A stretch of 53,716 bases of DNA, the filler included, from Bipalium vagum (Eukaryota): assembly GCA_037834085.1 (NCBI GenBank). It is 3 parts of 3 records of this genome, joined end to end, with 100 filler letters (N's around TTAATTAATTAA, not from the genome) between each part and the next. Parts side by side here need not be neighbours in the genome. Positions count along the whole stretch, not along the records: positions 17,384 to 36,855 come from JBBMKC010002364.1; 2 more parts are not named here. One strand, written 5' to 3'. How positions within the stretch are numbered: the stretch's first letter is position 1; each line of letters opens with the position of its first letter. The notes beneath the pieces were generated by a model that ran no database searches, was not told the DNA's origin, and was given only the letters and a program-made list of their open reading frames with translations. Shown piece after piece: positions 620-36,240 of this stretch. The translations under genes were made by a program, and so were the position numbers.

Positions 620-1531
620 ACCTCTGTATCTGGATAGGTTTAGTCACGGCTGACAGAATGAAGATTGACTTTGCAGCCCAATACAATCTCAAATGGAGAA
701 AACTTTGTTGAGCTCGGTTGAGTAGCATTGATACGAAACTCAATTTTTGGGAGCAATTCGTGCCAATCCTTTTCCTGACAACCGCTCTTTAGAGATATGG
801 TTATCATATCTCGAATCGTTCGGATCGCTCGCTCGACTAGACCGTTGGACTGGTGCTGGTAAGGTGAACTGAATTCACACTCAATATTGAGGTCTCTCCA
901 TTTTTGTCAAATCCAAGAACTTTCAAAGTTCTTTGCTCGATCTGTTAAAATACTCTTCGCCTTGCCAATGGTTCATTATTGCCTTGAAGGTTGATTGATC
1001 ATCAAGTTTGGACATCGCGCATAAACTCACTAGTTTGCTAAAACGGTCAATAATGACAACTATATATTTGTAGTGTGTCGCTGCTTTTTCCATAAAGGCT
1101 ACATCTACCATGATCTGCTCTAAGAAATGTGAGTTTCTTCTCGGGATAAGGATTTCTTTAGTGCGCGCTTGATCAATTTTTCTTTTGGCATAAACATCAT
1201 AGGTTTTTAAACATCGATTGACTGAATACCACATCGATGGCCTATAGTAATGATCTTTCAGATAGTTGAATATTTTCTTGCTACCAAGATGACACAGATC
1301 GGCATGAATCTCCATCACAAATTTATCAATAAATCTTTCGGGGATAATGATAAGATTTCGTTCGCTTCTTGATAAGAGCAACAAGTCGTCGGTAACATCC
1401 AAGTTATCTCTCAAATGATACAAACTGTTATTCTTCAATTCTTCAGGGTGTTCTCTCCTCCCTTCTGAAAGGCATTGAATAAATCCAGATATCAATTTAT
1501 CAGCCTTCTGTTCGCTTCTTATTCTTTTCAA
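620..1531 (-). pseudogene. Gypsy integrase fragment (HHCC-like region + rve core)
   Basis: IHADLCHLGSKK zinc-binding region and YIVVIIDRFSKLV. A frameshifted continuation SPYQHQSNGLVERAIRTIRDMI lies at about 800-880. Confidence 0.9.
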
Positions 1532-2072
1532 TTGAGAAATAATATTATGAACGGCACTGATCTATTTTGTTTTTGGCTTCTCAATCTTGGCTTGTTCATG
1601 CTTCATTTGGCATTGAGAGCACACGACATGGGAGATTCTGGATAGGCCATCAGCTTTACAATGATCTTGGCCTTTTCTGTACCTCAATTCAAAATTATAT
1701 TCTAAAGATTAGCTAACCAAGTTTGAAACTGTGGACTAATTGGGTTCTTCGTGGTGTTCATAAAAACCAAAGCTTTATGATCCGTTCTCACAATGACCTG
1801 TTTTTTCCATATAGATACTGCTTGAAATGGAGAACAAATTCATAGATTGATAATAGCTCTTTTCTGGTGACACATTATCCAAATTCATGGGTAGATAAGG
1901 GTCTAGAGGCAAAAGCAATAACTGTTTCACTTCCATCTTCCTTCAGCTGACTCAAAACAGATCCAATATAAAAGCACGATATCTGCTTGGAAAACCCAGA
2001 ATTGGTGCTTGGCATAGTTTATCCTTAACTGCTTGGAAATTATTCAGGTATTGTTTCATCCAATGGAGCTGT

Positions 2073-2693
2073 TTATCGGCACCTGATATAGCAGCGCATA
2101 AGGGAGCTGCTATTTCGGCATAATGGGCAATAAAACGCCAGTGGTTTTGCTTTTATTATTTCTTCAGTCTTCTTTTTGTTAGTTCTGACTCTATCGGCAC
2201 TCACTGTATGTCCCAGAAACACAAACTCTCGTTGGTGAAATTTGCACTTCGATGGATTAATCTTCAATCCAGTCTTACCAATCAGCTCCAAAACAACCTC
2301 CAAAATGACATTGTGTTCTTTTTCTTCTGTACTGTATATTAGAATATCATCTAAATATACTAGTACATTCTTGAACAGCAAACAACCATCAAGCAATTCA
2401 TGCATAAGTTTCTGAAAGGTAATGGGTGCCGTTGCCAGTTCGAAAGGCATCCGGTTGACGCAAAATTGGCCTTGTTTGGTGCTAAATGTTGTAATTGATT
2501 TAGCATTATCCATCAATTCCACCTGATAATAGGCTTGGCCAAGATCTATTGATGAAAAATATTTTGAATCAGCCACGCAATCCAGCAGCATTTGCATGTC
2601 TGGCATCGGGAACGTGTATTTTTCTGTTATGGCATTTATACGTCTGAGATCCATCCTTCTATTCGACAACCACCAACGGGGAGTTCCATGCAC
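2073..2693 (-). pseudogene. Gypsy reverse transcriptase fragment
   Basis: Motifs DLRRINAIT..YTFPMP, FSSIDLGQAYYQV, RMPFELATAPITFQKLM, VYLDDILIYS and KCKF...FLGH. Confidence 0.95.
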
Positions 2694-3239
2694 TTTTGCA
2701 TTTAGAAATTACACTGGCATCTAAAAGTTGAGTAATCATCTCATCAACTTTAGGTTCAAGATGTATTGCTTGTCTTCGTGGTGCCTGTGCAATAGGTGGG
2801 CCTGTGTGCCCAATATCAAATGAATGGGTCATGAATATTTTCCATATCGTAGTAACATATTACGCAATGGTTTGATGATTGAATGCCATCATTACTTGAT
2901 TTCCCCTATCTGTCAGATATTTTCTTAATCAAGTCTGATGACTCAATATTATTTACCACACACAATTGATTTCCAAAATTCTTCATAATGTCGACATCTC
3001 CAATAAAGTCAGGCTGCAGCTTCTTCTCGAAAATAATATAAGCTTCGATCTCGTTTTCCTTCAATAACAGTAGACTCAACGTTGAAATATCGGAATTGGT
3101 ATTAAAATCATTCTAAATCAGTAATGCTCTATTCAATATAATAATGACATAAAATAATAAATACTGAAGAATACTTAATCAAAAATATTAAATCATTCCA
3201 AAATTTCGTGCCGAGACTTTATTAAAAATGCAAAAGGTC

Positions 3240-3960
3240 AAAATTTTAATAATCATTAACATAGTCGCCATTTCTCTCTACAATTAGTTTCCAACAATCT
3301 ACAAGTTTTTCGATCCCCGATTCAAAAGATTTACTTAACTTTCCTAGGATGTAGTCGCTGAGATGATTTTTAACAGTCTCTACAGAATAAAACTTTTTTC
3401 CACTCAAACGGCTGCTTAAAGACCGGAATAGATAAAACTCTTTTGTTGATATATCTTTGAAGTAAGAAGGGTACTGCAAAATTTCATATTCTAACTCTTG
3501 TAGTTTTCCTAAGGTTTTTTATGCCATATGGAGTCTGGAATTATCATTATGATGAATTTGATGATTTGCAGCAATGAATCCTGAGAGTGAATCTCAGTAT
3601 TTATCTGCGTTTATTGCTTCATCACGTTGGAGTAGTTCTTAATAAATAATGCCTCTGAAATCCAACCAAATACACAGAATTAACTTCATTTGGTGTTGAT
3701 CAGCCTTTGGAACTTTTTTTGAACTTTCATTGGCTTTTTTCTAGGTTTCTTTACGCTGCATGTTATTGTACAGGATCCACTTTCATCGCCTGTTACTAAT
3801 CTATCCAAAAAAGGTTCATTCTTCTTTCGTTCAAGGAGAGATATGGAGACATCTATACACTGCAGTTTATTCCTTTAGGTCAATGCATGCGGCACCAATG
3901 AATGAAGCTTAGAAACGTATTCCTGGCTTTTGAAATGACTGCGATTGAAATATCATGTTT
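3240..3960 (-). mobile_element. Decayed mariner (DD34D) transposase
   Basis: Remnants of LVPHAL, LVTGDE, LILCIWLDFRGIIY, HHNDNSRLH and YPSYFKDISTKEFYLFRSL (HPPYSPDLAPSD-type motif), then GIEKLVDCWKLIVERNGDY*. Confidence 0.88.
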
Positions 3961-4599
3961 TGAATTGAGATTGAAGTTTTTTCTAATATGGTACCAATCA
4001 TGTCGTCCTTAATAGAATAATATCAAATAAGAAATAAAACAACATAAAACAAAAATTATCAAATTTTTCAAATTGTGGGTTCTACCGGATTCCTGAATTA
4101 GTCCTTTAGGGAGTCATTCATTGATGGCCGAGATCCATAAAACCGAGTCAAGTAAATGAACAAATGATAATCATATTTGGACAAAATCTGATAAGGTCCA
4201 TATCGATATACACTTTTATATCTTCAATATCTGTTTTTAAATCTTAAGTGCGCATTTTTACAAATTTAATCTTCTAAGTCGTCAATATCCACTTTTAAGC
4301 GTTTTTTACATTTTAAATATTCTCTTTATATTCGCGTTCCTCTTTTCTTTCCTATTTTTTATCTGTAGAGACGCTTTTATATGATCGACTTGACTAATCA
4401 GAGCTCCTAGAGATAAGATCAAATTGGATTTGTCCTCTTTAAGGCTTCCACGAGAATTGGTATAGTGATTCTGCCGAAAGGAAAATAATCGATTATCATT
4501 AGCAGTATTAACTCTACCTGAAAATAAGAACGAAACCCCATTAGTGCAAACACTGATGATTTTCTAAATAAGCGCATTTAGGGCTAATTAATTAGGTAA

Positions 4600-17383: not shown

Positions 17384-18323
17384 ATATCAAAAGATTTAAA
17401 AGATCGTCATGTTGCAGATGTGGAAATGATACATGAAATAAACAATATTGAAAATCCTACTCCAAGAGAAAAATTAGAAAGAGCTTTAGTAAAATTAATT
17501 TTGAAGGGGAAGGTATTGTTTGAACAAGGCGTACCAAAGATACTAAAGCCAAAGGCTCGCTTAACCAGAGAAGCAAAGAAATTAGTAACAGAAAAACTAT
17601 ATGAAAATTCCAAAGAGCGTACTGCAGAAAAAAGAGAGCAGTTAGCTAAAGAATTACATAAGGAATGTAGAAGATCTAAAAATTTATTGAAAGTTAAAGT
17701 TTTTAATAAAGATGATATTTGGCCAGCAGATTTAACATTTGTACCGGGAGAAAGAGAATATAAAATAATTCTAACGATTATAGATTTATATACAAGATTT
17801 GCTTTTGCAATTCCATTAAAAGATAAAACTGGAATCTCAATCACAAATGAATTTGAAAACATATTTGAAACATATCAACGTATTCCTAATAAACTTTTGG
17901 TTGATAAAGGTTCAGAATTCTACAATGCAAACTTCAAAGAATTTTGTAAAGATAATGAAATTGAAATTTTATCAACCTTTAATGAGGGTAAAGCTGTTGC
18001 AATAGAAAAATTTAATAAAACCTTTAAGAATATGATCTTCAAAAAGTTAACAGAACAAGGTAACCGAAAATGGTTAAATTTATTATTTTATTATTATTAT
18101 TAATATTATAAAAATAAATCAAAGTATAAAGTTTTAGATAGGGTAAGAATTTTTAAATATAAAATAAATTCGGTAAGGGATATACAGCAAAATGGACTGA
18201 TGAAATATTTATTATTAAAAATGTTTTAAAAACCGATCCAATAACATATGAAATAATCGATTTCAATGGTGAAAATATTTTTGGAAGATTTTATGAGAAT
18301 GAGTTACAAAAAACCTTGTTTTA
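17384..18323 (+). pseudogene. Polinton retroviral-like integrase with N-terminal PLA2-like helical segment
   Basis: Open from the gap: ISKDLKDRHVADVEM...EKLERALVKLILKGKVLFEQG, then rve core IWPADL, ILTIIDLYTRFAFAIPLKDK, LLVDKGSEFYN and KAVAIEKFNKTFK. After a break the Polinton-type tail KWTDEIFII...TYEIIDFNGENIFGRFYENELQK follows. Confidence 0.9.
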
Positions 18324-19155: not shown

Positions 19156-20300
19156 TATACGTTAAAAAACGTACAGTTAATATTTTATTTTTTAATCTCA
19201 GTACAATCCATTATACCTCCTCTTATTTTTATTTCTATACATTTTTCATGTAATAAAACCACATTTTTTCCGTAAATTTATCATTATTTTCTATATCTAA
19301 AGATATGTTTATTGTGTTTAAAGATAAATTTTCAGGTTGATCTTTTAAATCAAAACAGAATATAGAATATAAATTTTTAAATTCTATTAAACTTAATTGT
19401 GGTTTATTATTGAAATATTCACATGCTTTTATAAAATTCAAATAAACCATATAAATTTCTCCATTCTCAAATTTCATTAGATTTAATGGATAAAAAGTAT
19501 TATCAACTTGTACTCTTAATGACTTAAATTGATCATGTATAAATAAACTATTATTTTTTAAAAGATTGGGTTTATTCTCTCTAAAACCTTTAAAGATATA
19601 AATTGGTTTCTTTTTAACAGAAAATAAATGTAAATTACCTATTTCTCCTTCAGGAAGAGGTCTTTCTATACAAAGTCTTGAAATAGTTTACATTAAATGT
19701 TTTTTCTTCATTAATTAATGATAAAAACTTGAATTAGGATTCTGTATTTAAAGTTATTTTTGGAATAAGTAATTTTAATTCAACTAATTTTATTTTTGGA
19801 GTACCTGTTTACCATAAAAAAATTTTTTTCCACATCTAATCTTCTTGTAAATGTTAATTCTAATTCCATATTATAAATAACTCTACCAAAATATTGTAAA
19901 AATCCAAATATTAATTTTAATGGAAATAAACCCCAAATTCAAAAGTTTTTTACCATCTTTCACAACTGTATTGATTGAATATAATTCTTTTCTTTTTTAC
20001 ATATCCTTTATTACTTTCATATACTTTTTTTTCATCTAATATGCATCCAAAATTTTTCCACAATTATTTTTACCAATCATAACAAAATTAGTAATTGAAT
20101 TTGATGGTTCTAAATATTCAATTCTTTTAATAGGAGCTGACCTGAATGTAAATTGCATTTGTAAATAAATATGGGAAGAAATTGTATAATATTAAAAATA
20201 GAATTATAAGTTGAAAAATAAACTACAGCTAATTCATAGTTTAAATTTCGATCAAGAATTATAAGAGTTTCAAAAGTATAGGTAATTTTTTAGTTTCTAT
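19150..20300 (-). pseudogene. Polinton/adintovirus major capsid protein (hexon-like) remnant
   Basis: GLFPLKLIFGFLQYFGRVIYNMELELTFTR (about 19845-19935), KIKLVELKLLIPKITLN, NSLFIHDQFKSLRVQVDNTFYP and ORF 19235-19477 (YSIFCFDLKDQPENL..INISLDIE) resemble conserved DJR-MCP blocks. Confidence 0.75.
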
Positions 20301-25009: not shown

Positions 25010-25360
25010 TCTACTGGTATTCCTGGGTATCTACCGTATGCTAAGTAGAACTGCAGTCTCTAATGCTTGTATGCTCTAAATTGCACTGACATACTTTGTA
25101 AACATGTCATACTGTTACATACCCCCTGCTTGTAGATTTTAAAGATTAATACATCAACCAAAATTAGCATAACAGATATTTATATCTTGGGACATCAGAT
25201 AAAACTTCTAAAATAGGAAAACCTTTAAAATTATATTTATAAAATCTTTTAAGGGAGTGGGAAAAAATTGTGTCGCATTGCATAATAATAAAAATGCATT
25301 ATAAATTAATCTAATACATAACTATGGAAACTAATTCCAACAATCAATATGGTTACAATT
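25010..25360 (-). mobile_element. Small Gypsy 3'-end remnant just upstream of lectin copy 1
   Basis: On the - strand, FKGFPILEVLSDV (GPY/F-like), then PPT-like AGCAGGGGGTA followed directly by TGTAACAG (LTR start at 25119). Confidence 0.5.
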
Positions 25361-25607
25361 TCAAAAAGAATTAAAAACACAGAAGCATGCTTTTACAACC
25401 ATTTTTCCATGGTATCCATAAAAATATTATCTGAGTTTCTAAAATGAATTGAAGAATCATTGATTATTTTGGTATTTTTCGGCCAATAAAACATAAACAT
25501 TTTTATTTTATTTATATCTCAGCTCCGTGGGAATTTATCATTGTTATTATTTGAAGAATTTGTCAGAAAAAAATTAAAGTTGAAAAAAATATGAAAGGTG
25601 TCCAGAA

Positions 25608-26576
25608 ATGAAATTATTCGTTTTATCAATGCTCGTAGGATACGGTCTCGGATCACTGGGTACTTTTTGGACAATTTTTTTCATAATTTTAAACTTTATT
25701 AATTTTTTATTGTTTAGGGAACACAGTTATTTCTAAGAAAAGAACTACAAATGCCTCTGCCTGTCTCGATACTCGTTATCATAAACATTCTAATGCTGTG
25801 GACGGAAATGTTAACGGAGATAAGCATAAAAGTCTTTTTAACACTAAATAAATACTTTATAAACGCATTTCTTATTTTTAGAATCCTGCTATCACAGTTC
25901 TCTGTCTAATAGTGTAAAATGGTGGTTGGTGGTTCTGGACGTCGTTTCCTCAATAAGTAAAATCAGAATATATGGAAGGACGGACTGCTGCGGTATACTT
26001 TCACTTTTGTTTAACATTGATAAACATTTTAGCATGGAGAAGCAGCAATTTGACACTCCATGCCAGCTACGACAAAGAACTCGATTTCAATAAATCTTCA
26101 AAAAGGTTCTACAGAATTCGTTATTATCAGGGTCCACCGAAAAATCTTAATCAGCCTTTTGAGCTTTTTTTTTCAAGACTAGTTTATTTATTCTCCAATG
26201 ATGACTTCTTATTTTTTCTTATTTTAAGGTGTCCAGAACGATTGCCGTAACAAAAAAATTTGAAGACGAACCGATTCAGATTTGTGAGTTTGAGGTATAC
26301 GGTCATGCTTTAAAGAAGAATAATTCTGCTTTTTGTAAGTCTTTGGCACCAAAGAAATTTGAGCTAATGCCATTCTTAATAGATTCCAATAAACATGGAC
26401 CCATTGATTACGTTGGAAATGTTCAGAGTTTTGATATTACTCAAGGAAAGTCGCTGATTGAATGCGGCATTTCCTGTCTTGAGACCTTGAGATGTTTGTC
26501 GTTCTCTTTTCAGAAGGAAGATGAATGTCAGCTATTTGATCACGGTGGAGGAATGTTCTTCAACCATTTTCAGTAA
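25608..26576 (+). CDS. Secreted F-type lectin (fucolectin/FTP) + PAN/apple domain protein, copy 1 (6 coding exons)
   Basis: Exons 25608-25659, 25718-25831, 25882-25992, 26033-26181, 26229-26334 and 26383-26576 with GT-AG introns of 58, 50, 40, 47 and 48 nt give an open frame. It encodes signal peptide MKLFVLSMLVGYGLG, Ca-site AVDGN, CYH..KWWLVVLD...IRIYGRTDCCAWR (H-x27-RxDx4R, against the canonical H-x26), IQICEFEVYG, and PAN SLIECGISCLETLRCLSFSFQKEDECQLF. Confidence 0.9.
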
Positions 26577-26718
26577 ATGATGAGGCAACATTATTTTTAG
26601 GGAAACTTGTTTTAATTGGATATATTCCCAACTTTTCGTTTTTTGTGTTTTGTTTTGTTTTCATGTTTTTTTCAACACGTTCCGCTTTTTTCATTTCAAT
26701 AAATAATATTCGTCTTTA

Positions 26719-27180
26719 ATATTGGGTCGGCAATTAAACCCGTTCGGTTTTTAAATGAAATGAAATAATTTCTTATTGCCTAAAAAATTTATTAATTTGA
26801 AACAAAATTTTAATGCAGTAGCAATTTTGTATTTCATATGATATATATTAATAAATTATTGTTTAAATAATATCATTATTTAACCAACAATTCAAACTCT
26901 AATATGAAAGATAAAATGGAACATTTCAGACACATTCTTTATATTATTTTAAGTAAGGCAAGTGAACTGCGGATGTTCATTAAAAAAAATTTCCATTTAT
27001 ACAAGAACGATGCTTTAACAGAACTGGTTTGCAAAATTCAGTTCTAGAAATTTTAGCATGGACGATGCGACCCGCTTCGGTCTCTCCAAGGAGATAGAAT
27101 CAGATGATATCAAAGCTATTGTTGATGATAATCCAACCCAGGCGGTTCAGATTATATTCTGAACAATACGTTGATAAATA
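26719..27180 (+). mobile_element. Mariner 5' fragment (TIR + HTH)
   Basis: TIR TATTGGGTCGGCAATTAAACCCGTTCGGTTTTT, then MKDKMEHFRHIL and DDATRFGLSKEIESDDIKAIVDDNP. Confidence 0.8.
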
Positions 27181-27229
27181 AAAATATCCAATGCTTCCTT
27201 TTTAAGAAAAACAATTATTAAAGAGAACA

Positions 27230-28000
27230 CTACCCATAATCTATATTGAATAAAAGTCTAAACCTTAATAATTCCGACTTTCAATAAAATTCCCGTGGAA
27301 TTCTTCATTGCGAGTACTGAAATATTTTTTCCTCAATTTCCACCTCTGCAATCAGATTTTCAGAAGGTTGATTGAAGACTTTTTCTTTAGTCTTTTCCTT
27401 TTTAAACCACTATCGTTCAATATCCTACATAGAGTAGCTGATGATGGATATACGATTTCATCTGAAAAGGTTTACTTAAACATTTATTTGTGGTAAAGAA
27501 TAGTCTTCGGATGTAAAGTAACATATTGTTTTAAACAACGCAACCTCTTATATAATAAAAACAAACGTTACACACTTTAAATCCTTGTGATAAACGAGCA
27601 ACGTTAAGTTTTGGAAAGATATTTAGTTAGTTAATTCCAACTAATTCAAAATTAACATTTCTTTCCCATCCAGGTGTTATATGTAAGTGGAACCCACTTT
27701 CATCAATAGATATTGGATTAGAATCCCTGATATTGCAGATTGAATTACAGTATCGACCCTCGCATCATTGTTTTGATTAGAATTCCTATTTATTGGAATT
27801 TTTGTTATCACTTTCTTCGAATAACAACGTTTGGCTAAAGATAAAATGGATTCGGAAAATTAACAAAAAGATATGATAAAAAGTGACGAGAACTAATATG
27901 ATTTACACGATCCAAGTGGTGTTGCATACTATTGGCTCGAATTCAAAAAAGAAAAGTTGGTTCAATAGCGGAACCGTGCCAGACCGGATGATTTTAATTT
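27230..28000. mobile_element. Two Tc1/IS630-like fragments
   Basis: 27230-27560 (-): YVTLHPKTILY...YPSSATLCRILNDSGLKRKRL (HTH). 27800-28000 (+): DEN*YDLHDPSGVAYYWLEFKKE, resembling Tc3 SDEKKFNLDGPDG..YYW.DLRKE. Confidence 0.5.
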
Positions 28001-28345
28001 TTATTATTACGTATTATGGTTATTACCATTTTGAAGGTTTTCTTGTGAGAATTTAATCCTTTCCATTCCATCATTTTGTTAAGTTCAAAAAATGAGATTT
28101 ATTGAAAATTCTGTCAGATTTGCACCTTTTTCCAAAAATCTGGTGAATAAACGTGACGTCCAAGCTAAGAAATTCTATTTGCCAAAATTTGTTTGATTAT
28201 GAAAAAAATTTTCAGGGTAATATGCTCGAGGATTTATTACTACTGAAGAAGATAGCGGATTATTTAAGGAAATCCAGCATGTCATTTTTATTGGAATCAT
28301 AAAATTTTTGAAATCATCTCTGAATTTATTGAAATAGATGCTAAC

Positions 28346-29031
28346 ATGGCAACCACAACCAGAGAATTTTTAGCTGAATCTCTCAGGCCGGAAATTTTTA
28401 GAAGATCGGACGATATCGAGAAATTCATTATCAAGTGTAAGGACTATTTCAATATGTTAGGTCTCTCAAAGAATGTAAGAGGGCTTGAAGTGATAGGTTT
28501 GATGGAAAACGACCTCAGAAAAAAATATGAGTTGACAGATCCGAAAGCTGATTATGAAGAGCAGCTAAGAAACGTTTTCGGCCGATCAAAATCTAGAGTA
28601 AAGGATCTCAAAGAAGCGTTTGGCTCTAAACGTGGGGAAAAAGATGTCGATGTGTACGTGAAAAGGGTCACTGAATTAGTAGATCGATTAATGCAATATA
28701 CGTGGGACAAAGAGACCCTAAAAAGTGAATTGTTACTGTACTGTTGCATTGATAAAGATATGTGGCAACATCTGCAGATAAAAGAAAAGAAGGACTCAGA
28801 GGAGATTGTAAGTGAAATGAAAAGATTTGACAAAGGCAGAGTAGTACCTGATGAAGTGAATGTTGTCTCTTACAGAGACGCCTTAAAGGTGAACACTAAT
28901 ATAAGAAAGTCAGGACCGCCATACCCAAAACCATATAGTAATAATAATGTCTACAAAAGTGATAATAGGCAGCAACATGTAAGACCACGGCCAGAGACAG
29001 TTTGTTACAGTTGTAACAAAATTGGCACACA
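28346..29031 (+). mobile_element. Gypsy-type gag ORF truncated in its first CCHC knuckle by an LTR insertion
   Basis: MATTTREFLAESLRPEIFRRSDDIEKFI...CYSCNKIG. It is homologous to the gag at 30382-31193. The knuckle is interrupted at 29032 by TGTGTATAC (LTR end). Confidence 0.82.
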
Positions 29032-29795
29032 TGTGTATACTGATTTTCTTTGGACTTTCGAATTCTATATTATTGCCGTGAACATACCAATGTGTTCGGC
29101 GCATATGCCGTTAAAAAGCAATGCATTTTGATATCTACTTGGAGCCACTCAATTAAGCGCTTATTACGGATCCAAGTGTTTATTCTGTACAATGTTTTCA
29201 TAATTGCTAGAGACCACCAAAAGGACACCAGGTGGGATTCCGAATCTTTCCCCGACTTAAGGATCAGTTTGGTTCTAAAGGACTTTCACTGGTCGGGAAT
29301 ACATGATTATGATATTTCCTAAGGGACATAAAATCTGAATTGATTATTTTCCTAGAGTCGATAGAATTTTCCCAGCTTGTTTTTCATCAAGACTGTGACC
29401 AGTCCAGGTTTTACAAAAGTGATGTTGTCAAAACCCCTTAAGTTAGCCGGATGACTACTTTTATCGTCCTCCATCCAAAATACATTTCTCTTTAGGATAA
29501 ACCCACATAGGCACTGATACATATCAGCCTTGGATTTGATTTGATGAACGTTAACCATGTGTTTATCATGAGTAGGGCTCCTTCTTGCCCGGACTTGGTA
29601 TTCCTTAGTGCCTTTTGCGCATCGCAACTTACGTTTTGATATCGCTTTAGCAACAACGCCATTCTCACCTTTCTCGACGAAGAATAACAGTAAAATGTTT
29701 ATTATGGAATAAAAATCACGATCACTAAAAGTTTCAATAAAATGTTTATTTGATCATTAAGTTTCAATAAAATGTTTATTTTGGGATGCTCCACA
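29032..29795 (-). repeat. Putative 764-bp 3' LTR
   Basis: On the - strand it begins TGTGGAGC directly after the purine tract AAAAAAGTGGAGATA (29796-29810) and ends ...GTATACACA. It contains repeated AATAAACATTTTA units. Confidence 0.65.
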
Positions 29796-31193
29796 TATCT
29801 CCACTTTTTTGAAGAATTTTGTCCTCAACAGATGGCATGTAGAACATCATTAGACGTCCATTTGGGGTTTTGCCAATGAAGGCACAAATCTGGATTTCTG
29901 AGCCATAATGGAATACGACGACTTCAGGTAGACTGCCGGACTGGTTGACTTTTTTTTCTTTTTGATAGATTTCCCTTGAAATATGAGCAATAGAGCGTCC
30001 ATATCTCCTCCTTCAATCACAGCTCCCACTTTTTCATCATTCTCCAGATCACTAAAGTCTTTCTTCATGAATTTCCACACTTTTGCCCACTTTTCTTCTT
30101 TGCACCGGGGGCCCCTTTGGGAATCATTGCTGACGACATTTAATATAAGGCTCCTACTAACTCCCCAACTAGCGGAACCCTGTCTTTTGGTTACTGACTT
30201 TGCTCTTCTTCGTATTCGACCAGTCTATCACCGTCAACTTCCTCTTCTAATGCATTTAAATTATTCCTTCTATAAACTTTCTTTGGACGTCTGATCCTCT
30301 GTGCTTGAAAACGTCTACCATCATGAAGGTTCGTATAACGTTCCCTTTCACTATGCCCATTCCTGATGCACCGCCTACACTTTATATTTGGACAATTTCT
30401 CCTAATATGACCCTATCTCTGACATCCGAAGCATACTTGAGGTTTCCTTTTAGGAAAAAAGCCCTGCTAATGTGATCCTGACTCAAACAGGTCCAGCATT
30501 CTATTTGTCTTCTTGCCGTACAGTTACGAGCTAAATGACCCTCCTTATTACACCCATAACATTTAATATTTTCTCTTGCTATTTGTCTTCCTTTAAATGA
30601 GGGTGTTCTGGTGTCATGATTTTGTGTTACCTTCCTTGTAACAACATCTCTGTAACTCCTTACTGCATTCACCGACTTTTTCTGTTCTTTTTCTTTGATG
30701 TCGGTCATCAATCTCATCAAATCTTTAATTTCGCTGTCTTTCTCCAGCTTTCGCATTCTAATTTCTCGTGGGACCTTCTCATCTCCAATGCATTGTACCA
30801 AGAACAGTGCCTCAAGCTTTTCAACTGTCAGATCATGTGACAGTGCTTTCTTTACCAATGATCTTACCTTCCTAAAAAATCCTTCAATGTCCTCACTGCC
30901 TCTTCTACAAATTATTAATTCTTCCCAGTCGTCAACGACATTTTTTTCTTTCTCGAACAATAGACGGACTCTAGCTTCAAATCCGCTTGCCTTCTCAGAT
31001 CTTTCCTCGTAGGCCTCCCATAGATCTTTATGTAACAACGCATTAATCGCTGTTTCTCTTTTCTTTATTGGGGTCTCCTTAATGTCAAAGTATCTTGACA
31101 TCTTTTTATAAAACACCCCATGTCGTCTCCTTTTCTTAGTACACCAGGAGCTATTCTATCTGCGATCGAGTCCGATAGTGTTGATGCCGCCAA
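29032..31193 (-). mobile_element. Gag-only (pol-less) LTR retroelement
   Basis: Frameshifted gag 31193 to about 30330 (LAASTLSDSIADRIAPGVLRKGDDM.../...CYGCNKEGHLARNC, CWTCLSQDHISR and two more knuckles), followed about 550 bp later by PPT and LTR. No RT, RNase H or integrase between them. Confidence 0.75.
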
Positions 31194-31477
31194 GTTATAT
31201 TCTTGAGTACTCATTTGTAAAAAATAATTCAAAGTCAAAGCAATAATAATATATTTCATTAAATCCGATTAACCAAACGCCTTTTATTAAAATTAAATTA
31301 TTTACTTTTTTAAAATTAACCAACATTTATTTTAAATATTTTTTTTTAATTTTAAAAAACGTAACATTATAAATTTTTTAAAAAATTTAAATTAAAAACA
31401 TTTAGTAATTGTTAATTTAGGCCTAAGGTCCTTATTTAAAAAATTCAAGCAAGACAATTGTTCGAATCACTCCTTAT

Positions 31478-31770
31478 ATCCCCCACTCAAGAAGTTTTTA
31501 AACTTCTCAACGTTCCTCTCCAGAATTCTTACATCTGCGTGTTCTATCAAATACAGTCTTCTATGAATCTTTCTTTGATTCGATATGGACCTTCATATCT
31601 ATGCTGACCCTTGTTCCTGAAGGCAACATGTTTTTTAATAAAACATTCTCATTTCCGTCTGACAGAGTGATTGTTATGAGTTCATCAGTTTTAACTACAT
31701 TCTTTTTGTCCATCTGTAAGTGTTCGACTGTCATCGGCTCGTCTTTCCATCATTCTTCTGCTTGGCAGGG
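31478..31770 (-). mobile_element. Gypsy integrase C-terminal (GPY/F) fragment with PPT
   Basis: RYEGPYRIKE, then frameshifted YLIEHADVRILERNVEKFKNF and purine tract GAGTGGGGGA (about 31479-31488). Confidence 0.7.
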
Positions 31771-31911
31771 TGTGTTGTGGAAATATAAAAATATAGACAA
31801 AAATTACTTAGTTTTACCCTTCATCGGCTGCGCAGGTCTTCTTCCTCCAAATCAACATACATACACACATACAACAAACCAACTTAACCAAACACTTTTC
31901 CTTATCTGAGT

Positions 31912-32200
31912 CTAGAGGTTGTAGAGGTAGATATGATATGACTGCGTGATAACAGACGCAATCATATCGGTTGATAACCTATGAATGTCTATCTCCTTGA
32001 AGCCAAGTCGACGGTGTACGTTATCATTCTCTGGATCCCAGGAGCCGATGCACCCGAGATTAATCGTCCAGATATCGATTTTGTTGCGGGTTGCAAGCGC
32101 CATTTGTTGAGTGAAGTCCATATATTTCTTCTGTTTTATCTTTATACCTTCAGAAAAGTTCGAGCATTCGTCATATGGCACTTTTAGGTCGATATCTGGC
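31912..32200 (-). mobile_element. Restriction-like endonuclease C-terminus of an R2/NeSL/Utopia-type non-LTR retrotransposon
   Basis: DLKVPYD...KQKKY...INLGCIGSWDPENDNVHRRLGF...VITQSYHIY matches the RLE signature D.K.PFE / K..KY / IVGALGSWDP.ND..L..LG / S..IY. Confidence 0.82.
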
Positions 32201-32249
32201 AAATATTCATATATATATTCATATACATTCATATATATATATATTCATA

Positions 32250-33170
32250 TTTCTGCATAAAACGTAATAATTTTTACATAGTAATAAATTGCATTTTCTA
32301 TCATCTATTAAAGATTTTACATAAAAATGTACAAAATGGATGGGTATTATATTTTGATTATCATTTACTTCACATAACACATTAGCAAAATATTATTTAG
32401 TTTATTAAATTTTTAAATATCTTGAATTTTCATTGGAAAATTAATATCTCGGATATTTAATTCATTTATAATGGGAATAATAATCTTTCTAAATCGTCTT
32501 CTGCAGGATAAAGATAACCTATAATTGAATATAAAAAACACTAATCATCATTATTTTCAATACTTACAATATAAGAAAATTTAAATGGTAATTTTATATA
32601 AGAAGACCCAAGTAATGATCGATTATTAAAAAAATTTAATTGTAATAAATTTATAAATTTCCATCCAGATCCATGTAATTCTTTTTCTTCAAAAAAGGTT
32701 TTTAATTGCTCCAAATTAAATATTATCGAATTTTGAATTTCATTTTTATCTATTATTCTAGTTGGTTGAGAATAAAAATTATACGTTATTTCTTCATTAA
32801 TTATTGGAATAAAATAATCACATTCGATTGTTATTTTATATCCAATACTTTTTGTTGATGTTCAAAATATTTCATTAATTTTTAAAATAATTTTTATTTA
32901 CTTTTTAAAAATGTTGTTTACTATAACTTTATCTTTTATACATATTTTTAATTTTAGAATTTAGATTGTTTGATATGAATTCAATTACAACTTCTTTTGG
33001 TAATTCATTAAATATTATTATTATTCAATGAGTTATCTTTATGAAGTATAGATTTATTATGAGAAATTAAAGTTGTTTTAGTTTTGAAATGTTTACAACA
33101 TAACTCCCAATACAATACTATAATTTTTGATTTGCTTTTCTCGGCTTTGTTTAATTTTCATGTCATGTTT
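32250..33170 (-). pseudogene. Second Polinton pPolB fragment (N-terminal region with C2H2-like finger)
   Basis: ELCCKHFKTKTTLISHNKSILH; EEKELHGSGWKFINLLQLNFFNNRSLLGSSYIKLPF; IENNDD*CFLYSIIGYLYP; LNIRDINFPMKIQDI*KF. These match the GSGW / GSSYI.LP / N.D..CF.W / I.FP....I.KF blocks of Polinton pPolB. Confidence 0.82.
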
Positions 33171-33219
33171 TTTATATATTTATCTTTCAATATATATTGA
33201 TTCAATAAATGAGAACTGA

Positions 33220-33393
33220 TAATATGATAAGTAGTGGGAAAAACACTGATGAAACTCAAGACCTAAGATTTCAAATAAATATTAAATTTAACAGTTCCAA
33301 AGCGTGGTATTTTTATAAATTTAATAAATATGTGGAACTATTCTTGGGTCTTGGGTTTTCTTATTGTTTTTACCACTAATCTTATCTTTATTA
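33220..33393. repeat. Imperfect foldback / MITE-like inverted repeat
   Basis: GATAAGTAGTGGGAAAAACACTGATGAAACTCAAGACCTAAGA versus the reverse complement of the right arm, GATAAGATTAGTGGTAAAAACAATAAGAAAACCCAAGACCCAAGA. Inner AGTTCCA/TGGAACT also pair. Confidence 0.7.
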
Positions 33394-34079
33394 AATGTTA
33401 ATAATATCAGGCGGAAAATGTTGAGTATAGTGTTTGTTAGTTGGCACTTCCCTCGTCATTTATAGAATTATAATTTAAATAAGTAAATTAAACAAAAATA
33501 TAAAACATTGTTACTTAGTAACACTTTACGGTGAATATTATTTAATACTGATACCCTTTTGGTTTTAATAACATTTCAAAATTTATTTCTTAAGAAAGCC
33601 GATGGAAAACATATTAGCTTTGTTCCATTTTAAATGTAGACCTTAGAAAAAATAAAATACATAGCAGTGGAATATTCATCACTCGGGAATCGTGAAATAA
33701 GCCATGATAAAAGTTTAAATTTCAAAAGCGAAAGGTGTATTGTTATAATAATTGCTCTAGGAGCGGTTACATCTATTGTTTATATAAAAGGAAAAACCTT
33801 TTAACAGATGTTAAAATAATATTTCTTCCTCCGTATGTTTCATACTTCACTGACATGAGACTTGTCTTTAGAAAAAACTTCCAATTTAAAATTTGTGTAG
33901 TGCCCCTAAGACAATTTAATTAGGTATATAAATAAAATGAACTTTTACATGAAACTCAAATTTTATTTATTGTACTTAAATAAACGAAACGCGTTAAATA
34001 AAACATTAAAACCATAAACACAAAAAATGAACATGTCTAATAGAAACAAGGGTCCTTTAATGTGATTTTACTTTGACAT

Positions 34080-35057
34080 TTACTGAAAATGGTTGAAGAA
34101 CATTCCTCCACCATGATCAAACAGATGACATTCGTCTTCCTTCTGGATAGAGAACGACAAACATCTCGAGACCTCCAGGCAGGAAATGCCGCATTCAATC
34201 AGTGACTTTCCTTTATCAATATCAAAACTCTCAACATTTCCAACGAAATCAACGGGTCCATGTTTATTGGAATCTGAAAAGATGATATTAATCTAATTTC
34301 GTTCTGGTCTCAAAGACTTACAAAAGGCAGAATTCTTCTTTTCCAAAGCATGACCGTATACTTCAAACTCACAAATCTGAATTGCATCGTCTTCAAATTT
34401 TTTTGTTACGGCAATCGTTCTGGACACCTTAAAATAAGAAAAAATAACAAGTCATCATTGGAGAATAAATAAACTAGTCTTGAAAAGAAAAACTCAAGCG
34501 GCTGATAAGGATTTTTAGGTGGACCCTGATAATAACGAATTCTGTAGAACCTTTTTGAAGATTTATTGAAATCGAGTTCTTTGTCGTAGCTGGCATGGAG
34601 TGTCAAATTGCTGCTTCTCCATGCTAAAATGTTTATCAATGTTAAACAAAAGTGAAAGTATACCGCAGCAGTCCGTCCTTCCATATATTCTGATTTTACT
34701 TATGGAGGAAATGACGTCCAGAACCACCAACTACCATTTTACACTGTTAGAAAAGTAACTGTGATAGCACGATTCTAAAAATAAGAAATGCGTTTGATAA
34801 ATAAATAAAAAGTATTTATTTAGTGTTAAAAGGACTTTGAGACATATGTCCGTTAACATTTCCGTCCACAGCAATAGAATGTGTAAGGTAACGAACAATG
34901 TGACAAGCAGAGGCATTTGTAGTTTTATTCGTAGAAATAACCGTGTCTGTTAAAATCGAAAATATATAAATTTTCATCTTCTGAAATAAATTGTCCAAAG
35001 AGTACCCGATGATCCGAGACCGTATCCTACGAGCAGTGATAAAACGAATAATTTCAT
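34080..35057 (-). pseudogene. F-type lectin + PAN gene, copy 2, with premature stop
   Basis: Same six-exon structure as copy 1 (ATG 35057, stop 34080-34082), with all splice sites retained. The conserved TGG TGG (WW) in exon 3 is TGG TAG (34731-34733). Confidence 0.88.
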
Positions 35058-35502
35058 TTCCGAACCGCTTTCATTTTTATTTAACTTAAATCTTTACCGT
35101 GACCAATTCTTCAAATAACAAAAATGATAATGTCCCACAGAGCTGAGAATAAATAAAAAAAATGTTCTCATTTTATTGGCCAGAAAATTAAAAAAATAAA
35201 TATGTTTACTTGATATTTTATAACTAAATCAGAACATGGTGATTGTAAACGCACCACTTATTGTATGGATTAAAGTAATATTGAAGACACGATTTGTTTT
35301 TATCCTTTGTCAATTTGCAGCCAAATTAAGTTCGAAATGTCGGAGTTGGCAATCCAAAGTTCGTCATTTGATGTTTTAAATAATTCAACTCGAAAGTTAT
35401 TCGTCTTGTTTTACTGCGTAAATTACGAAATTACTTTTTACGGTGCATATTTAAATATCTGATTACAATATAAATTGACATTCCTAGAGCCACTTTCTAA
35501 AC

Positions 35503-36240
35503 AATGGATATTTCCAAAATTTGTTTCATTCTTGAATACGATTACCGTTGTGGAAGTAATGAAAGGCAAGCGGTTCGAAATACGAGTAAAGTATTTGGTA
35601 TCAAGATCATCAATGAACGAATGGTGCAGCGATGGTTTTGGACATTACGTAGGAAAAATTTCTGTCTTCAAAATATGCCACGTGGTTGACCTGAGACGAA
35701 GGTGAATCAAGCTGACCTGAAAGTTGTAGTGGAGAAGGATCCTTTTCAAAGTACTCAAAAGTTAGCGTTTAAATTCAATATCTCCATCTCTACAATAACT
35801 AATCATTCAAACCAAATTACCAAAGCTAAAAATCTTGACCAATGGTAATTCGTGAATTACGCGAATACCAGAAAACAAAGCTTTTTCAAGCTTCTCTTTC
35901 TTTGTTATTACGACAGAAAGGCAAACCATTTCTTCAACGTATTCTAACATCTGACGAAAATTGAATTATATGCAATAATCGCATGCAATTATCTAAATGG
36001 TTGGATAAAGATGAAGAGATCAAACTTTATCAAAAGCCGAACGTTCTCAAAAATATGGTATCCACCTGGTCGTTCAGTGCGGGTATTATCCGCTATACCT
36101 TTTAAAACCAGAAAATTCTATTACAACAGAAACATACAGCACCGAATTAAGGAATATGATGATGTTGCTGGCTATTAAGAGATTGGTCGATCGAGAACAA
36201 GTAATTTTCTTGCAAGACAACGCTCGACCACGAAGACAAA
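35503..36240 (+). mobile_element. Decayed mariner
   Basis: MDISKICFILEYDYRCGSNERQAVRN..ERMVQRWF, PFLQRILTSDEN, WSFSAGIIRY and IFLQDNARP. Confidence 0.88.

What the first reader, a model, noticed from the sequence alone, without database searches (positions are those of the whole stretch)
25400..35250. Inverted pair of secreted F-type lectin-PAN genes hidden by short introns
Seen: two convergent copies about 7.5 kb apart with the same six-exon structure and a homologous 5' UTR. The ORF track shows them only as scrambled fragments. Spliced, they encode signal peptide + F-type lectin domain (AVDGN, H..RTDCCAWR, CEFEVYG) + PAN/apple module. Established: F-type lectins bind fucose through an H-x26-RxDx4R motif and act in invertebrate immunity and gamete recognition. 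Inference: this is a local, rapidly evolving glycan-recognition family embedded in a transposon island, and the strongest candidate here for an undescribed system.
Basis: partly seen in the sequence, partly recalled or inferred. Interest (0 to 1): 0.75.

Follow-up and report, generated by a model that had tools for sequence, protein, structure and literature searches.

The report
Inverted pair of fucolectin-PAN lectin genes
Two mirror-image copies of a small secreted sugar-binding protein gene sit among transposon debris in an AT-rich animal genome; one copy is intact and the other carries a stop codon, and they are ordinary members of a growing lectin family, not a new kind of system.

Summary
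The inverted pair is real (arms 25503-26627 and 34029-35162). Both copies have six exons with GT..AG introns. I corrected the model I had first traced: exon 4 is 149 nt and intron 4 is 47 nt, not 131. Two metagenome homologues (L001, L002) keep the extra 26 codons and have identical exon lengths (111/149/106 nt). Copy 1 is intact (726 nt).

Tested exon by exon (I never joined exons), the protein has a hydrophobic leader, the F-type lectin cation motif, the H...RxDx4R triad and the C-terminal strand. The exon 3 profile matches 1K12 at E 0.003 and the exon 5 profile matches FBP32 at E 1e-5. A PAN module follows; two relatives pass Pfam's cut-offs.

Divergence between the copies is mosaic: a 186-nt identical tract (0 of 20,000 permutations), near-identical inner introns, and a replacement-rich exon 2 (pN/pS 1.6, p = 0.046).

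No RNA data exist, so splicing and expression are unproven. ESM Atlas lists mollusc and cnidarian "fucolectin-like" clusters with the same F5/8C+PAN layout. Unchecked first-reader notes report the same gene type on other pieces of this genome. Verdict: a new member of a known kind, of modest interest.

The parts
25503..25607 (+). Copy 1: conserved 5' flank / putative 5' UTR, with a 6-codon upstream ORF (25591-25611) that overlaps the start codon
   Evidence: 75-80% identical to 35162-35058. The upstream ATG at -17 is seen in both copies in the read-out.
25608..25659 (+). Copy 1 exon 1: start codon and hydrophobic leader (17 whole codons)
   Evidence: Mean Kyte-Doolittle value 1.73 over residues 3-16. 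No signal-peptide predictor was available.
25718..25831 (+). Copy 1 exon 2: N-terminal part of the lectin domain, with the cation motif AVDGN; the replacement-rich exon
   Evidence: Homologous to L001 60-164, E 3.6e-5. Nd 16 / Sd 3 against copy 2.
25882..25992 (+). Copy 1 exon 3: SCYH ... KWW ... [quoted passage not shown]
   Evidence: 6 of 6 PDB hits are F-type lectins. Profile against 1K12, E 0.0028, residues 49-83. Pfam F5_F8_type_C_2, E 0.0014, 19.7 bits, below the cut-off. 71% identical to L001 213-314.
26033..26181 (+). Copy 1 exon 4 (revised, 149 nt): begins with the W-R that completes RxDx4R
   Evidence: Aligns end to end with L001 381-524 (E 8e-8) and L002 102-233 (E 3.6e-9). The part first taken as intron matches on its own at E 1e-5 and 1e-4. 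Exon length is 149 nt in L001 and L002 as well.
26229..26334 (+). Copy 1 exon 5 (revised, 106 nt): C-terminal strand of the lectin domain, ICEFEVYG
   Evidence: Profile against FBP32 (3CQO), E 9.9e-6, matching both of its domains. Exon length is 106 nt in L001 and L002.
26383..26576 (+). Copy 1 exon 6: PAN/apple-like module with four invariant cysteines, then stop TAA
   Evidence: Pfam PAN_1, E 4e-4, 20.6 bits against a 21.4 cut-off. 4 of 4 PDB hits are plasma kallikrein apple domains. The cysteines are invariant in 8 of 8 aligned sequences.
26698..26703 (+). Copy 1: AATAAA, a likely polyadenylation signal
35006..35057 (-). Copy 2 exon 1
34836..34946 (-). Copy 2 exon 2 (111 nt, one codon shorter than in copy 1)
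34664..34774 (-). Copy 2 exon 3, carrying the in-frame TAG
34731..34733 (-). Premature stop codon: TAG in copy 2 where copy 1 has TGG (25923-25925)
   Evidence: mismatch at 25924.
34475..34623 (-). Copy 2 exon 4 (revised)
34322..34427 (-). Copy 2 exon 5 (revised)
34080..34273 (-). Copy 2 exon 6: PAN-like module and stop codon
   Evidence: Pfam PAN_1, E 0.021.
25953..26138 (.). 186-nt tract identical to 34703-34518 (end of exon 3, intron 3, first 106 nt of exon 4): a gene-conversion tract
   Evidence: 0 of 20,000 permutations reach this run length.
34518..34703 (.). The partner of the identical tract, in copy 2
28346..31116 (.). Spacer between the copies: two convergent gag-like ORFs (28346-29131 on +, 30382-31116 on -) from different retroelement insertions
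   Evidence: zf-CCHC, E 3.4e-6. The two ORFs are only 26% identical.

Best explanation
This is a local inverted duplication of a six-exon animal gene from a multicopy family. The gene encodes a secreted protein of about 241 residues: a hydrophobic leader, one F-type lectin (fucolectin) domain of about 160 residues spread over exons 2-5, and a C-terminal PAN/apple-like module in exon 6. Copy 1 is intact. Copy 2 is disabled by one nonsense codon, which is probably recent because the rest of it still shows purifying selection.

Inferred mechanism. The lectin domain binds terminal fucose or a related sugar through the His/Arg/Arg triad, with a structural cation held at AVDGN. The loops encoded by exon 2 sit at the positions of CDR1 and CDR2 of eel agglutinin and tune which glycan is recognised. 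The PAN module supplies a second binding or oligomerising surface, so the protein can cross-link or agglutinate glycan-bearing targets, most likely as a humoral recognition lectin.

The family evolves by birth and death. Gene-sized duplications arise, short gene-conversion tracts homogenise some segments (introns 2-4, exon 4), other coding patches stay different, and some copies die.

The confidence of 0.78 is for the gene pair, its domain layout and its mode of evolution. For the specific role as a fucose-binding recognition lectin I would give about 0.5.
For: Shown:
- Inverted arms and their alignment.
- Complete GT..AG exon models: 726 nt for copy 1, 723 nt with a TAG for copy 2.
- Collinear homologues L001 and L002 with the same phases and exon lengths (111, 149, 106 nt) and introns of 43-54 nt.
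- Exon 3: 6 of 6 PDB hits are F-type lectins, and the profile matches 1K12 at E 0.0028, aligning H to H52 and R to R79.
- Exon 5 profile matches FBP32 at E 9.9e-6.
- The motifs as defined in PMC5712786 and PMC5297725 (passages) are present: h2DGx = AVDGN, and H-x27-R-T-D-x4-R.
- PAN: top Pfam family for exon 6 in 4 of 4 genes. L001 passes PAN_3 (21.6 against 21.1 bits) and P0001 passes PAN_1 (26.4 against 21.4 bits).
- pN/pS is 0.32 outside exon 2 and 1.61 in exon 2.
- The 186-nt identical run is reached by 0 of 20,000 permutations. Inner introns differ at 3 of 137 sites, outer introns at 32 of 104, p = 1.7e-10.
- 140 related contigs in run X1, with summed depth peaking on exons.

Inferred: secretion, sugar specificity, the role of the PAN module, and an immune function.
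Against: - There is no RNA evidence. The only run holding the locus is genomic, and its contigs run through the introns.
- No single exon reaches Pfam's F5_F8_type_C cut-off (best 19.7 against 27.8 bits).
- Exons 2 and 4 give only chance-level PDB hits, even as profiles.
- The H-to-R spacing is 27 residues, against 24-26 in the published motif.
- The aromatic pair of CDR2 (Phe45/Tyr46 of eel agglutinin, PMC5712786 passage) is K/H in copy 1, M/S in copy 2 and M/L in L001, by counting from the motif. Fucose specificity is therefore uncertain.
- The PAN model is poor (pLDDT 57). Foldseek found nothing at E <= 0.001. The best VIA match is only Z 3.0, though it is a PAN-type lectin, 2YIL.
- The exon 2 excess of replacements is marginal (p = 0.046), and a dying copy could contribute to it.
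- Because the joined protein was left out, the lectin fold was never tested.
Confidence: 0.78

Rival explanations
1. Both copies are dead relics of the lectin family in a transposon graveyard. Copy 1 merely looks intact and is not expressed.
For: Copy 2 has a nonsense codon. The neighbourhood is retroelement and mariner debris. No RNA run holds the locus. phmmer against 1.84 billion representatives found no annotated full-length relative.
Against: Copy 1 keeps an open frame through six exons and all ten splice dinucleotides. pN/pS is 0.32 outside exon 2. Exon lengths and phases match homologues that are 33-71% identical. Both copies keep AATAAA and a conserved 5' block.
Confidence: 0.12
2. The inverted pair is an assembly artefact: two alleles or two distant paralogues wrongly joined head to head.
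For: Only one DNA run holds the locus, and it may be the data the assembly was made from. No listed contig spans both copies. I could lay reads on copy 1 only.
Against: The arms differ at 163 of 1136 columns in a mosaic pattern. The 7.4-kb spacer is unique sequence with two different gag insertions. The piece has no N. Similarity ends at gene-sized borders. Contigs of X1 match copy 1 exactly across 25513-25933.
Confidence: 0.05
3. The domain is a discoidin/FA58C-type or otherwise non-fucose jelly-roll module, so the protein binds a different ligand such as galactose-type sugars or lipids and is not a true fucolectin.
For: The only Pfam hits are to the general F5_F8_type_C models, and they fall below the cut-off. 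The CDR2 aromatic pair is missing and the H-R spacing is one residue longer. L001 lacks the vicinal cysteine pair. The review notes that relatives with altered pockets bind other ligands (PMC5712786 passage).
Against: All three basic triad residues and the cation motif are kept in copy 1, copy 2 and L002, and can be kept in L001. Every PDB hit of exons 3 and 5 above noise is an F-type lectin, none a coagulation-factor C domain.
Confidence: 0.2

Closest known systems
Single-domain F-type lectins such as Anguilla anguilla agglutinin (PDB 1K12)
   Same: The cation motif (AVDGN type), S-C-x-H, W-W, R-x-D-C-C and x-x-R are all present. The spacing from the D of the cation motif to the S of S-C-x-H is the same, 11 residues. 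Exon 3 aligns to residues 49-83. Eel isoforms also vary most in CDR1 and CDR2 (PMC5712786 passage).
   Different: One extra residue between H and R. No aromatic pair at the CDR2 positions. No counterpart of a third disulfide in exon 4 (that disulfide is recalled, not tested). A C-terminal PAN module is added.
MsaFBP32, tandem F-type lectin of striped bass (PDB 3CQO)
   Same: The exon 5 profile matches the C-terminal strand of both of its domains, E 9.9e-6. Exon 3 also hits it weakly.
   Different: FBP32 has two lectin domains and no PAN. Here there is one lectin domain plus PAN.
ESM Atlas clusters 'fucolectin-like' (253 aa, Mollusca, 211 members) and 'F5/8 type C / PAN domain-containing protein' (230 aa, Cnidaria, 68 members)
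   Same: The same pair of Pfam families (F5_F8_type_C or _2 plus PAN_1) and the same size as the 241-residue product.
   Different: Scores of 0.78-0.81 make this a lead, with no alignment behind it. phmmer with the exon 5-6 ORF found none of these proteins at E <= 0.001, so any sequence relationship is distant. I could not fetch a member to test.
C-type lectin + PAN (CW) proteins of nematodes
   Same: A small secreted lectin domain fused to a PAN module, in expanded families (PMC5297725 passages). Notes on this genome also report C-type lectin-PAN pairs (unchecked).
   Different: The sugar-binding domain has a different fold.
Apicomplexan PAN/apple lectins (Sarcocystis SML-2, PDB 2YIL; Toxoplasma MIC4 apple domains, 4A5V and 2LL4)
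   Same: These are the best, though weak, structural matches of the exon 6 model: Z 3.0, rmsd 3.0 over 42 residues, 26% identity for 2YIL; Z 2.1-2.2 for MIC4. The entry titles show that a PAN module can itself bind sugar.
   Different: All Z values are under 5 and the model is low-confidence. Here only the four-cysteine core is present, and sugar binding by this PAN module is pure conjecture.

Membership tests
F-type lectin (fucolectin) domain | Fucose-binding motif: H, then 24-26 residues, then R-x-D-x4-(R/K) (PMC5712786 and PMC5297725 passages) | tested here: met
   H and R-T-D-C-C lie in exon 3, and W-R opens exon 4, with one split codon between them. The H-R spacing is 27, one more than in 1K12 (gap in the alignment). 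The motif is kept in copy 2 and L002, and can be kept in L001.
F-type lectin (fucolectin) domain | Cation-binding motif h2DGx | tested here: met
   A-V-D-G-N is invariant in 3 of 3 exon 2 sequences. Motif definition from a PMC5712786 passage.
F-type lectin (fucolectin) domain | Sequence similarity to solved F-type lectins | tested here: met
   Exon 3: 6 of 6 hits are F-type lectins, and the profile gives E 0.0028 against 1K12. Exon 5 profile: E 9.9e-6 against 3CQO. Exons 2 and 4 gave no F-lectin hit.
F-type lectin (fucolectin) domain | Pfam F5_F8_type_C / F5_F8_type_C_2 above the gathering score | tested here: inconclusive
   Only single exons were scanned. The best was exon 3 at 19.7 bits against a 27.8 cut-off. 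The domain is split over four exons and the joined protein was left out.
F-type lectin (fucolectin) domain | F-type jelly-roll fold | not tested
This needs the joined product of exons 2-5.
F-type lectin (fucolectin) domain | Aromatic CDR2 pair forming the pocket for the fucose 5-methyl group (Phe45/Tyr46 in eel agglutinin) | tested here: not met
   Counting from the cation motif, these positions are K/H in copy 1, M/S in copy 2 and M/L in L001. The papers describe this as a conserved feature, not a strict criterion.
F-type lectin (fucolectin) domain | Binds L-fucose | not testable with these tools
   Needs recombinant protein and a glycan array.
PAN/apple module | Pfam PAN_1 / PAN_3 at the curated cut-off | tested here: met
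   Met at family level: P0001 PAN_1 26.4 against 21.4 bits; L001 exon 6 PAN_3 21.6 against 21.1 bits. Copy 1 itself is 0.8 bits short (20.6 against 21.4), copy 2 scores 15.1 and L002 scores 20.3.
PAN/apple module | Conserved cysteine core | tested here: met
   Four cysteines are invariant in 8 of 8 aligned sequences. The outer disulfide of full apple domains is absent (recalled, not tested).
PAN/apple module | PAN fold (a helix packed on a small sheet) | tested here: inconclusive
   AlphaFold model with mean pLDDT 57, showing one helix and two strands. Foldseek found 0 matches at E <= 0.001. Among 47 VIA rows with Z >= 2, four are PAN/apple entries including rank 1 (2YIL, Z 3.0), all within noise.
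Secreted protein | N-terminal signal peptide | not testable with these tools
   Exon 1 starts M-K followed by a 14-residue hydrophobic stretch, mean hydropathy 1.73. No predictor was available.

The most novel reading that the evidence does not exclude
The inverted pair could work as a small diversity generator. Under this reading, the disabled copy 2 and other family members serve as donors for short, patchy gene-conversion tracts. Those tracts shuffle the loop-coding patches of the intact copy 1 (exon 2, the start of exon 3, the end of exon 4) while the framework and introns are homogenised. The result would be a population-level, or even somatic, repertoire of fucolectin binding sites, analogous to pseudogene-templated conversion of immunoglobulin V genes.
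Probability: 0.06. Interest if true: 0.65.

Novelty: new member of a known kind. Interest (0 to 1): 0.28.

Why it matters
The report adds a correctly modelled gene pair, one intact and one nonsense-bearing, to a lineage-expanded family of small fucolectin-PAN proteins that ordinary ORF tracks miss because the introns are only 40-58 nt long.

It gives a clean small example of mosaic gene conversion between inverted duplicates, with replacement changes concentrated where the sugar-contact loops should be.

It also shows that the same gene type, with the same exon lengths, turns up in an environmental metagenome.

For lectin biology the useful question is whether a fucolectin that lacks the usual aromatic pocket residues, fused to a PAN module, has a new glycan specificity. 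The question is testable, but the answer is unlikely to be surprising.

Tried and rejected
- RNA evidence. The look-up of sequencing runs returned one run, not on record as RNA. Read laying showed it is genomic: contigs cross the introns, and the two reported joints (25818>25917 and 26294>26537) do not match any splice site and look like paralogue or repeat artefacts. So none of the five junctions could be confirmed. I also could not see whether the TAG of copy 2 appears in X1, because 26 rows of variant letters were not shown.
- My first model, with a 131-nt intron 4, was rejected.
- Pfam on exons 2, 4 and 5 found nothing, apart from one chance hit on L001's exon 4. PDB searches with exons 2 and 4, alone and as profiles, gave only chance hits: a ribosomal protein and follistatin.
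- phmmer of the natural 115-aa ORF (exon 5 + in-frame intron 5 + exon 6) against 1.84 billion representatives gave 9 hits at E <= 0.001. None is an annotated full-length relative. The best are raw ORFs on short metagenome contigs. P0010 is an unrelated kinase wrongly placed in one of those clusters.
- I did not use the search for homologous proteins. With a 115-aa query it cannot see proteins longer than 201 aa, and the product here is 241 aa.
- The fold of the PAN module was inconclusive. The Atlas gave nothing usable for exon 4 alone.
- Literature. Searches found no paper in the held library describing an animal F-type lectin + PAN protein; 64 and 76 were badly chosen. I read only passages of PMC5712786, PMC8878817, PMC5297725 and PMC9334734. 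Bishnoi et al. 2015 is not held. Its architecture tables, and Table S1 of PMC8878817, may list this fusion, and I did not open supplements.
- I did not try to identify the organism. A findings search for hints returned nothing.
- The two gag ORFs being part of the duplication was rejected: they are 26% identical. A third lectin copy in the piece was rejected.

Full report
THE OBSERVATION. The repeat finder finds inverted arms at 25503-26627 and 34029-35162 in four blocks of 79-93% complementarity. MAFFT aligns the two copies over about 1.2 kb. In the arms, 163 of 1136 columns differ. Copy 1 reads on the + strand and copy 2 on the - strand. They point at each other, with stop codons 7.5 kb apart. 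The ORF list shows only fragments. The piece has no N and is 29% G+C.

THE GENE MODEL, AND A CORRECTION. Reading both copies and checking with scripts that translate each exon separately gave six exons with GT..AG at every intron. I first placed a 131-nt intron 4.

A pattern search of JGI metagenome contigs with the PAN alignment returned two loci: L001 (1143 nt) and L002 (1056 nt), both about 26-27% G+C. Each exon peptide of copy 1, searched separately, finds a collinear match:
- exon 2: E 3.6e-5 in L001
- exon 3: E 1.9e-15 in L001 (71% identical)
- exon 5: E 1e-8 in L001 and 5e-11 in L002
- exon 6: E 6e-15 in L001 and 2e-11 in L002

These E-values refer to a tiny database of two loci. The loci were selected on exon 6 only, so the matches of exons 2-5 are independent of that selection.

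The 26 codons I had put inside intron 4 are conserved as protein in both loci (E 1e-5 and 1e-4). The long exon 4 aligns end to end (E 3.6e-9 and 8e-8). In L001 and L002, exon 4 is 149 nt and exon 5 is 106 nt, exactly as in the revised copy 1. L001's exon 3 is 111 nt as well (L002's is cut by the contig edge). Phases are the same, borders are GT..AG, and introns are 43-54 nt.

Revised copy 1:
- exons 25608-25659, 25718-25831, 25882-25992, 26033-26181, 26229-26334, 26383-26576
- 726 nt in all, so 241 codons plus the stop
- introns of 58, 50, 40, 47 and 48 nt

Revised copy 2:
- exons 35057-35006, 34946-34836, 34774-34664, 34623-34475, 34427-34322, 34273-34080
- 723 nt in all

Exons 2-5 together encode about 160 residues. 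That fits the roughly 140-residue F-type lectin domain (PMC5712786 passage) better than the short model did.

A STOP CODON IN COPY 2. Exon 3 of copy 2 reads TAG at 34733-34731 where copy 1 has TGG. This is the second W of the conserved 'KWW'. As assembled, copy 2 is a pseudogene or a null allele.

WHAT THE PROTEIN IS.
- Exon 1 is a short hydrophobic leader.
- Exon 2 carries A-V-D-G-N, which fits the cation motif h2DGx.
- Exon 3 alone gives six PDB hits. All six are F-type lectins: eel agglutinin 1K12, two pneumococcal fucolectin-related proteins, two Sm-hPAF entries and FBP32. As a four-sequence profile it matches 1K12 at E 0.0028 over residues 49-83, putting its H on H52 and its R on R79.
- Exon 4 opens with W-R, which completes R-x-D-x4-R.
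- The exon 5 profile matches the C-terminal strand of both domains of FBP32 at E 9.9e-6.
- Pfam sees exon 3 as F5_F8_type_C_2 (E 0.0014) but below its cut-off.
- Exons 2 and 4 find nothing on their own.
- Exon 6 has PAN models as its top Pfam families in 4 of 4 genes. Copy 1 is 0.8 bits short of the PAN_1 cut-off. L001 passes PAN_3, and the nearest database relative P0001 passes PAN_1. Four cysteines are invariant in 8 of 8 sequences. PDB hits are 4 of 4 plasma kallikrein apple domains, all weak. The AlphaFold model of exon 6 is poor (pLDDT 57), and the fold searches are inconclusive.

DIFFERENCES FROM THE TEXTBOOK FUCOLECTIN.
- The H-R spacing is 27 residues, against 26 in 1K12.
- The spacing from the D of the cation motif to S-C-x-H is the same as in 1K12. 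The positions of the aromatic CDR2 pair can therefore be read off, and they are not aromatic in any of the three exon 2 sequences.
- L001 lacks the vicinal cysteine pair.

HOW THE TWO COPIES DIFFER.
- Outside exon 2, pN/pS is 0.32. Copy 2 therefore evolved under constraint for most of its history, and its stop codon is probably recent.
- Exon 2 has 16 replacement and 3 silent changes (pN/pS 1.61; Fisher p = 0.046 against the other exons). The 13 replaced residues fall in three patches. Two of them lie where CDR1 and CDR2 should be, counting from the cation motif. This is an inference that assumes no indel on the CDR1 side.
- Divergence is mosaic. A 186-nt tract (25953-26138, matching 34703-34518) is identical, and 0 of 20,000 permutations reach that length.
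- Introns 2-4 differ at 3 of 137 aligned sites. Introns 1 and 5 differ at 32 of 104 (p = 1.7e-10).
- Two coding patches inside the homogenised zone (25882-25952 and 26139-26181) differ at 16 of 114 sites, more than the introns beside them (p = 5e-4). These differences include silent changes. Patchy gene conversion, possibly from other family members, explains them better than selection alone.

FAMILY AND SURROUNDINGS.
- At 88% likeness, 140 contigs of run X1 lay on copy 1. Summed depth is 260-420 over parts of exons 1, 3, 5 and 6, against 46-68 over introns 1, 2 and 5. Depth of contigs is a crude measure, and X1 may be the assembly's own data.
- First-reader notes on other pieces of this genome describe further F-type lectin + PAN genes. 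I did not check them.
- Only two copies lie in this piece.
- The spacer holds two gag-like ORFs that are 26% identical to each other.
- The flanks hold an rve integrase ORF at the piece edge, a mariner HTH_48 ORF, and a repeat with depth in the thousands starting at about 26727.

COMPARISON WITH WHAT IS KNOWN.
- In the passages I read, the F-type lectin review names C-type lectin, pentraxin, CCP, transmembrane and FA58C domains as frequent partners in eukaryotes, not PAN.
- The rotifer lectin survey reports no such fusion.
- The nematode survey reports C-type lectin + PAN.
- ESM Atlas lists named clusters of 230-253 aa with F5_F8_type_C plus PAN_1 in molluscs and cnidarians. The scores are under 0.9, so this is a lead only.
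- phmmer found no annotated full-length relative of the exon 5-6 part.

I conclude that the architecture already exists in automatic annotation of other phyla, that this lineage's version is distant in sequence, and that I found no published description of it in the searches named above.

VERDICT. This is a real, ordinary, lineage-expanded lectin gene pair with an instructive conversion mosaic. One copy is intact and the other carries a stop codon. Expression and sugar specificity are untested.

Noticed in passing
window 25591-25611 and 35074-35054 (- strand): Both copies have an upstream ATG 17 nt before the main start. It opens a 6-codon ORF whose TGA overlaps the main ATG (ATGA). The position is conserved although the codons differ, so it may be a regulatory uORF.
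   Followed up: no
window 26720-27160: Directly after copy 1's polyadenylation signal a very high-copy repeat begins. Summed contig depth in X1 jumps from about 60 to 1500-4500 at roughly 26727. It looks like the end of a decayed mariner-type element.
   Followed up: partly
window 35504-35686 (+): An ORF with the Mos1-type transposase HTH_48 domain (E 4.8e-8, above the cut-off) lies about 450 nt upstream of copy 2. The frame decays downstream.
   Followed up: partly
window 28346-29131 (+) and 30382-31116 (-): Two convergent gag-like ORFs lie in the spacer, only 26% identical to each other (E 6e-13). The second has a zf-CCHC knuckle. They are separate insertions of related retroelements.
   Followed up: partly
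window 17420-18100 (+): An integrase core (rve) ORF, E 2.9e-12, sits at the left edge of the piece.
   Followed up: no
window 25352-25487: Run X1 holds a second contig about 90% identical to the sequence upstream of copy 1 (13 changed letters and 1 gap over 136 nt), outside the inverted arms. It is either a third copy sharing a longer flank or a divergent haplotype (record 2).
   Followed up: no
window 19238-19477 (-): An 80-aa ORF has a weak match to the double jelly-roll-like domain PF21738 (E 0.0065, 16.1 bits against a 27 cut-off). It is probably chance, but could be a relic of a Polinton-like element.
   Followed up: no
L001 311-321: The metagenome homologue L001 has T-S where the others have the vicinal cysteine pair after R-T-D. 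Two alternative GT donors, 3 nt apart, are possible there.
   Followed up: partly
protein cluster of P0004: The 90% cluster that holds the PAN fragment P0004 also lists P0010, a 547-aa protein that by my reading of its sequence is a kinase unrelated to the PAN fragment. This looks like a clustering error in the collection.
   Followed up: no
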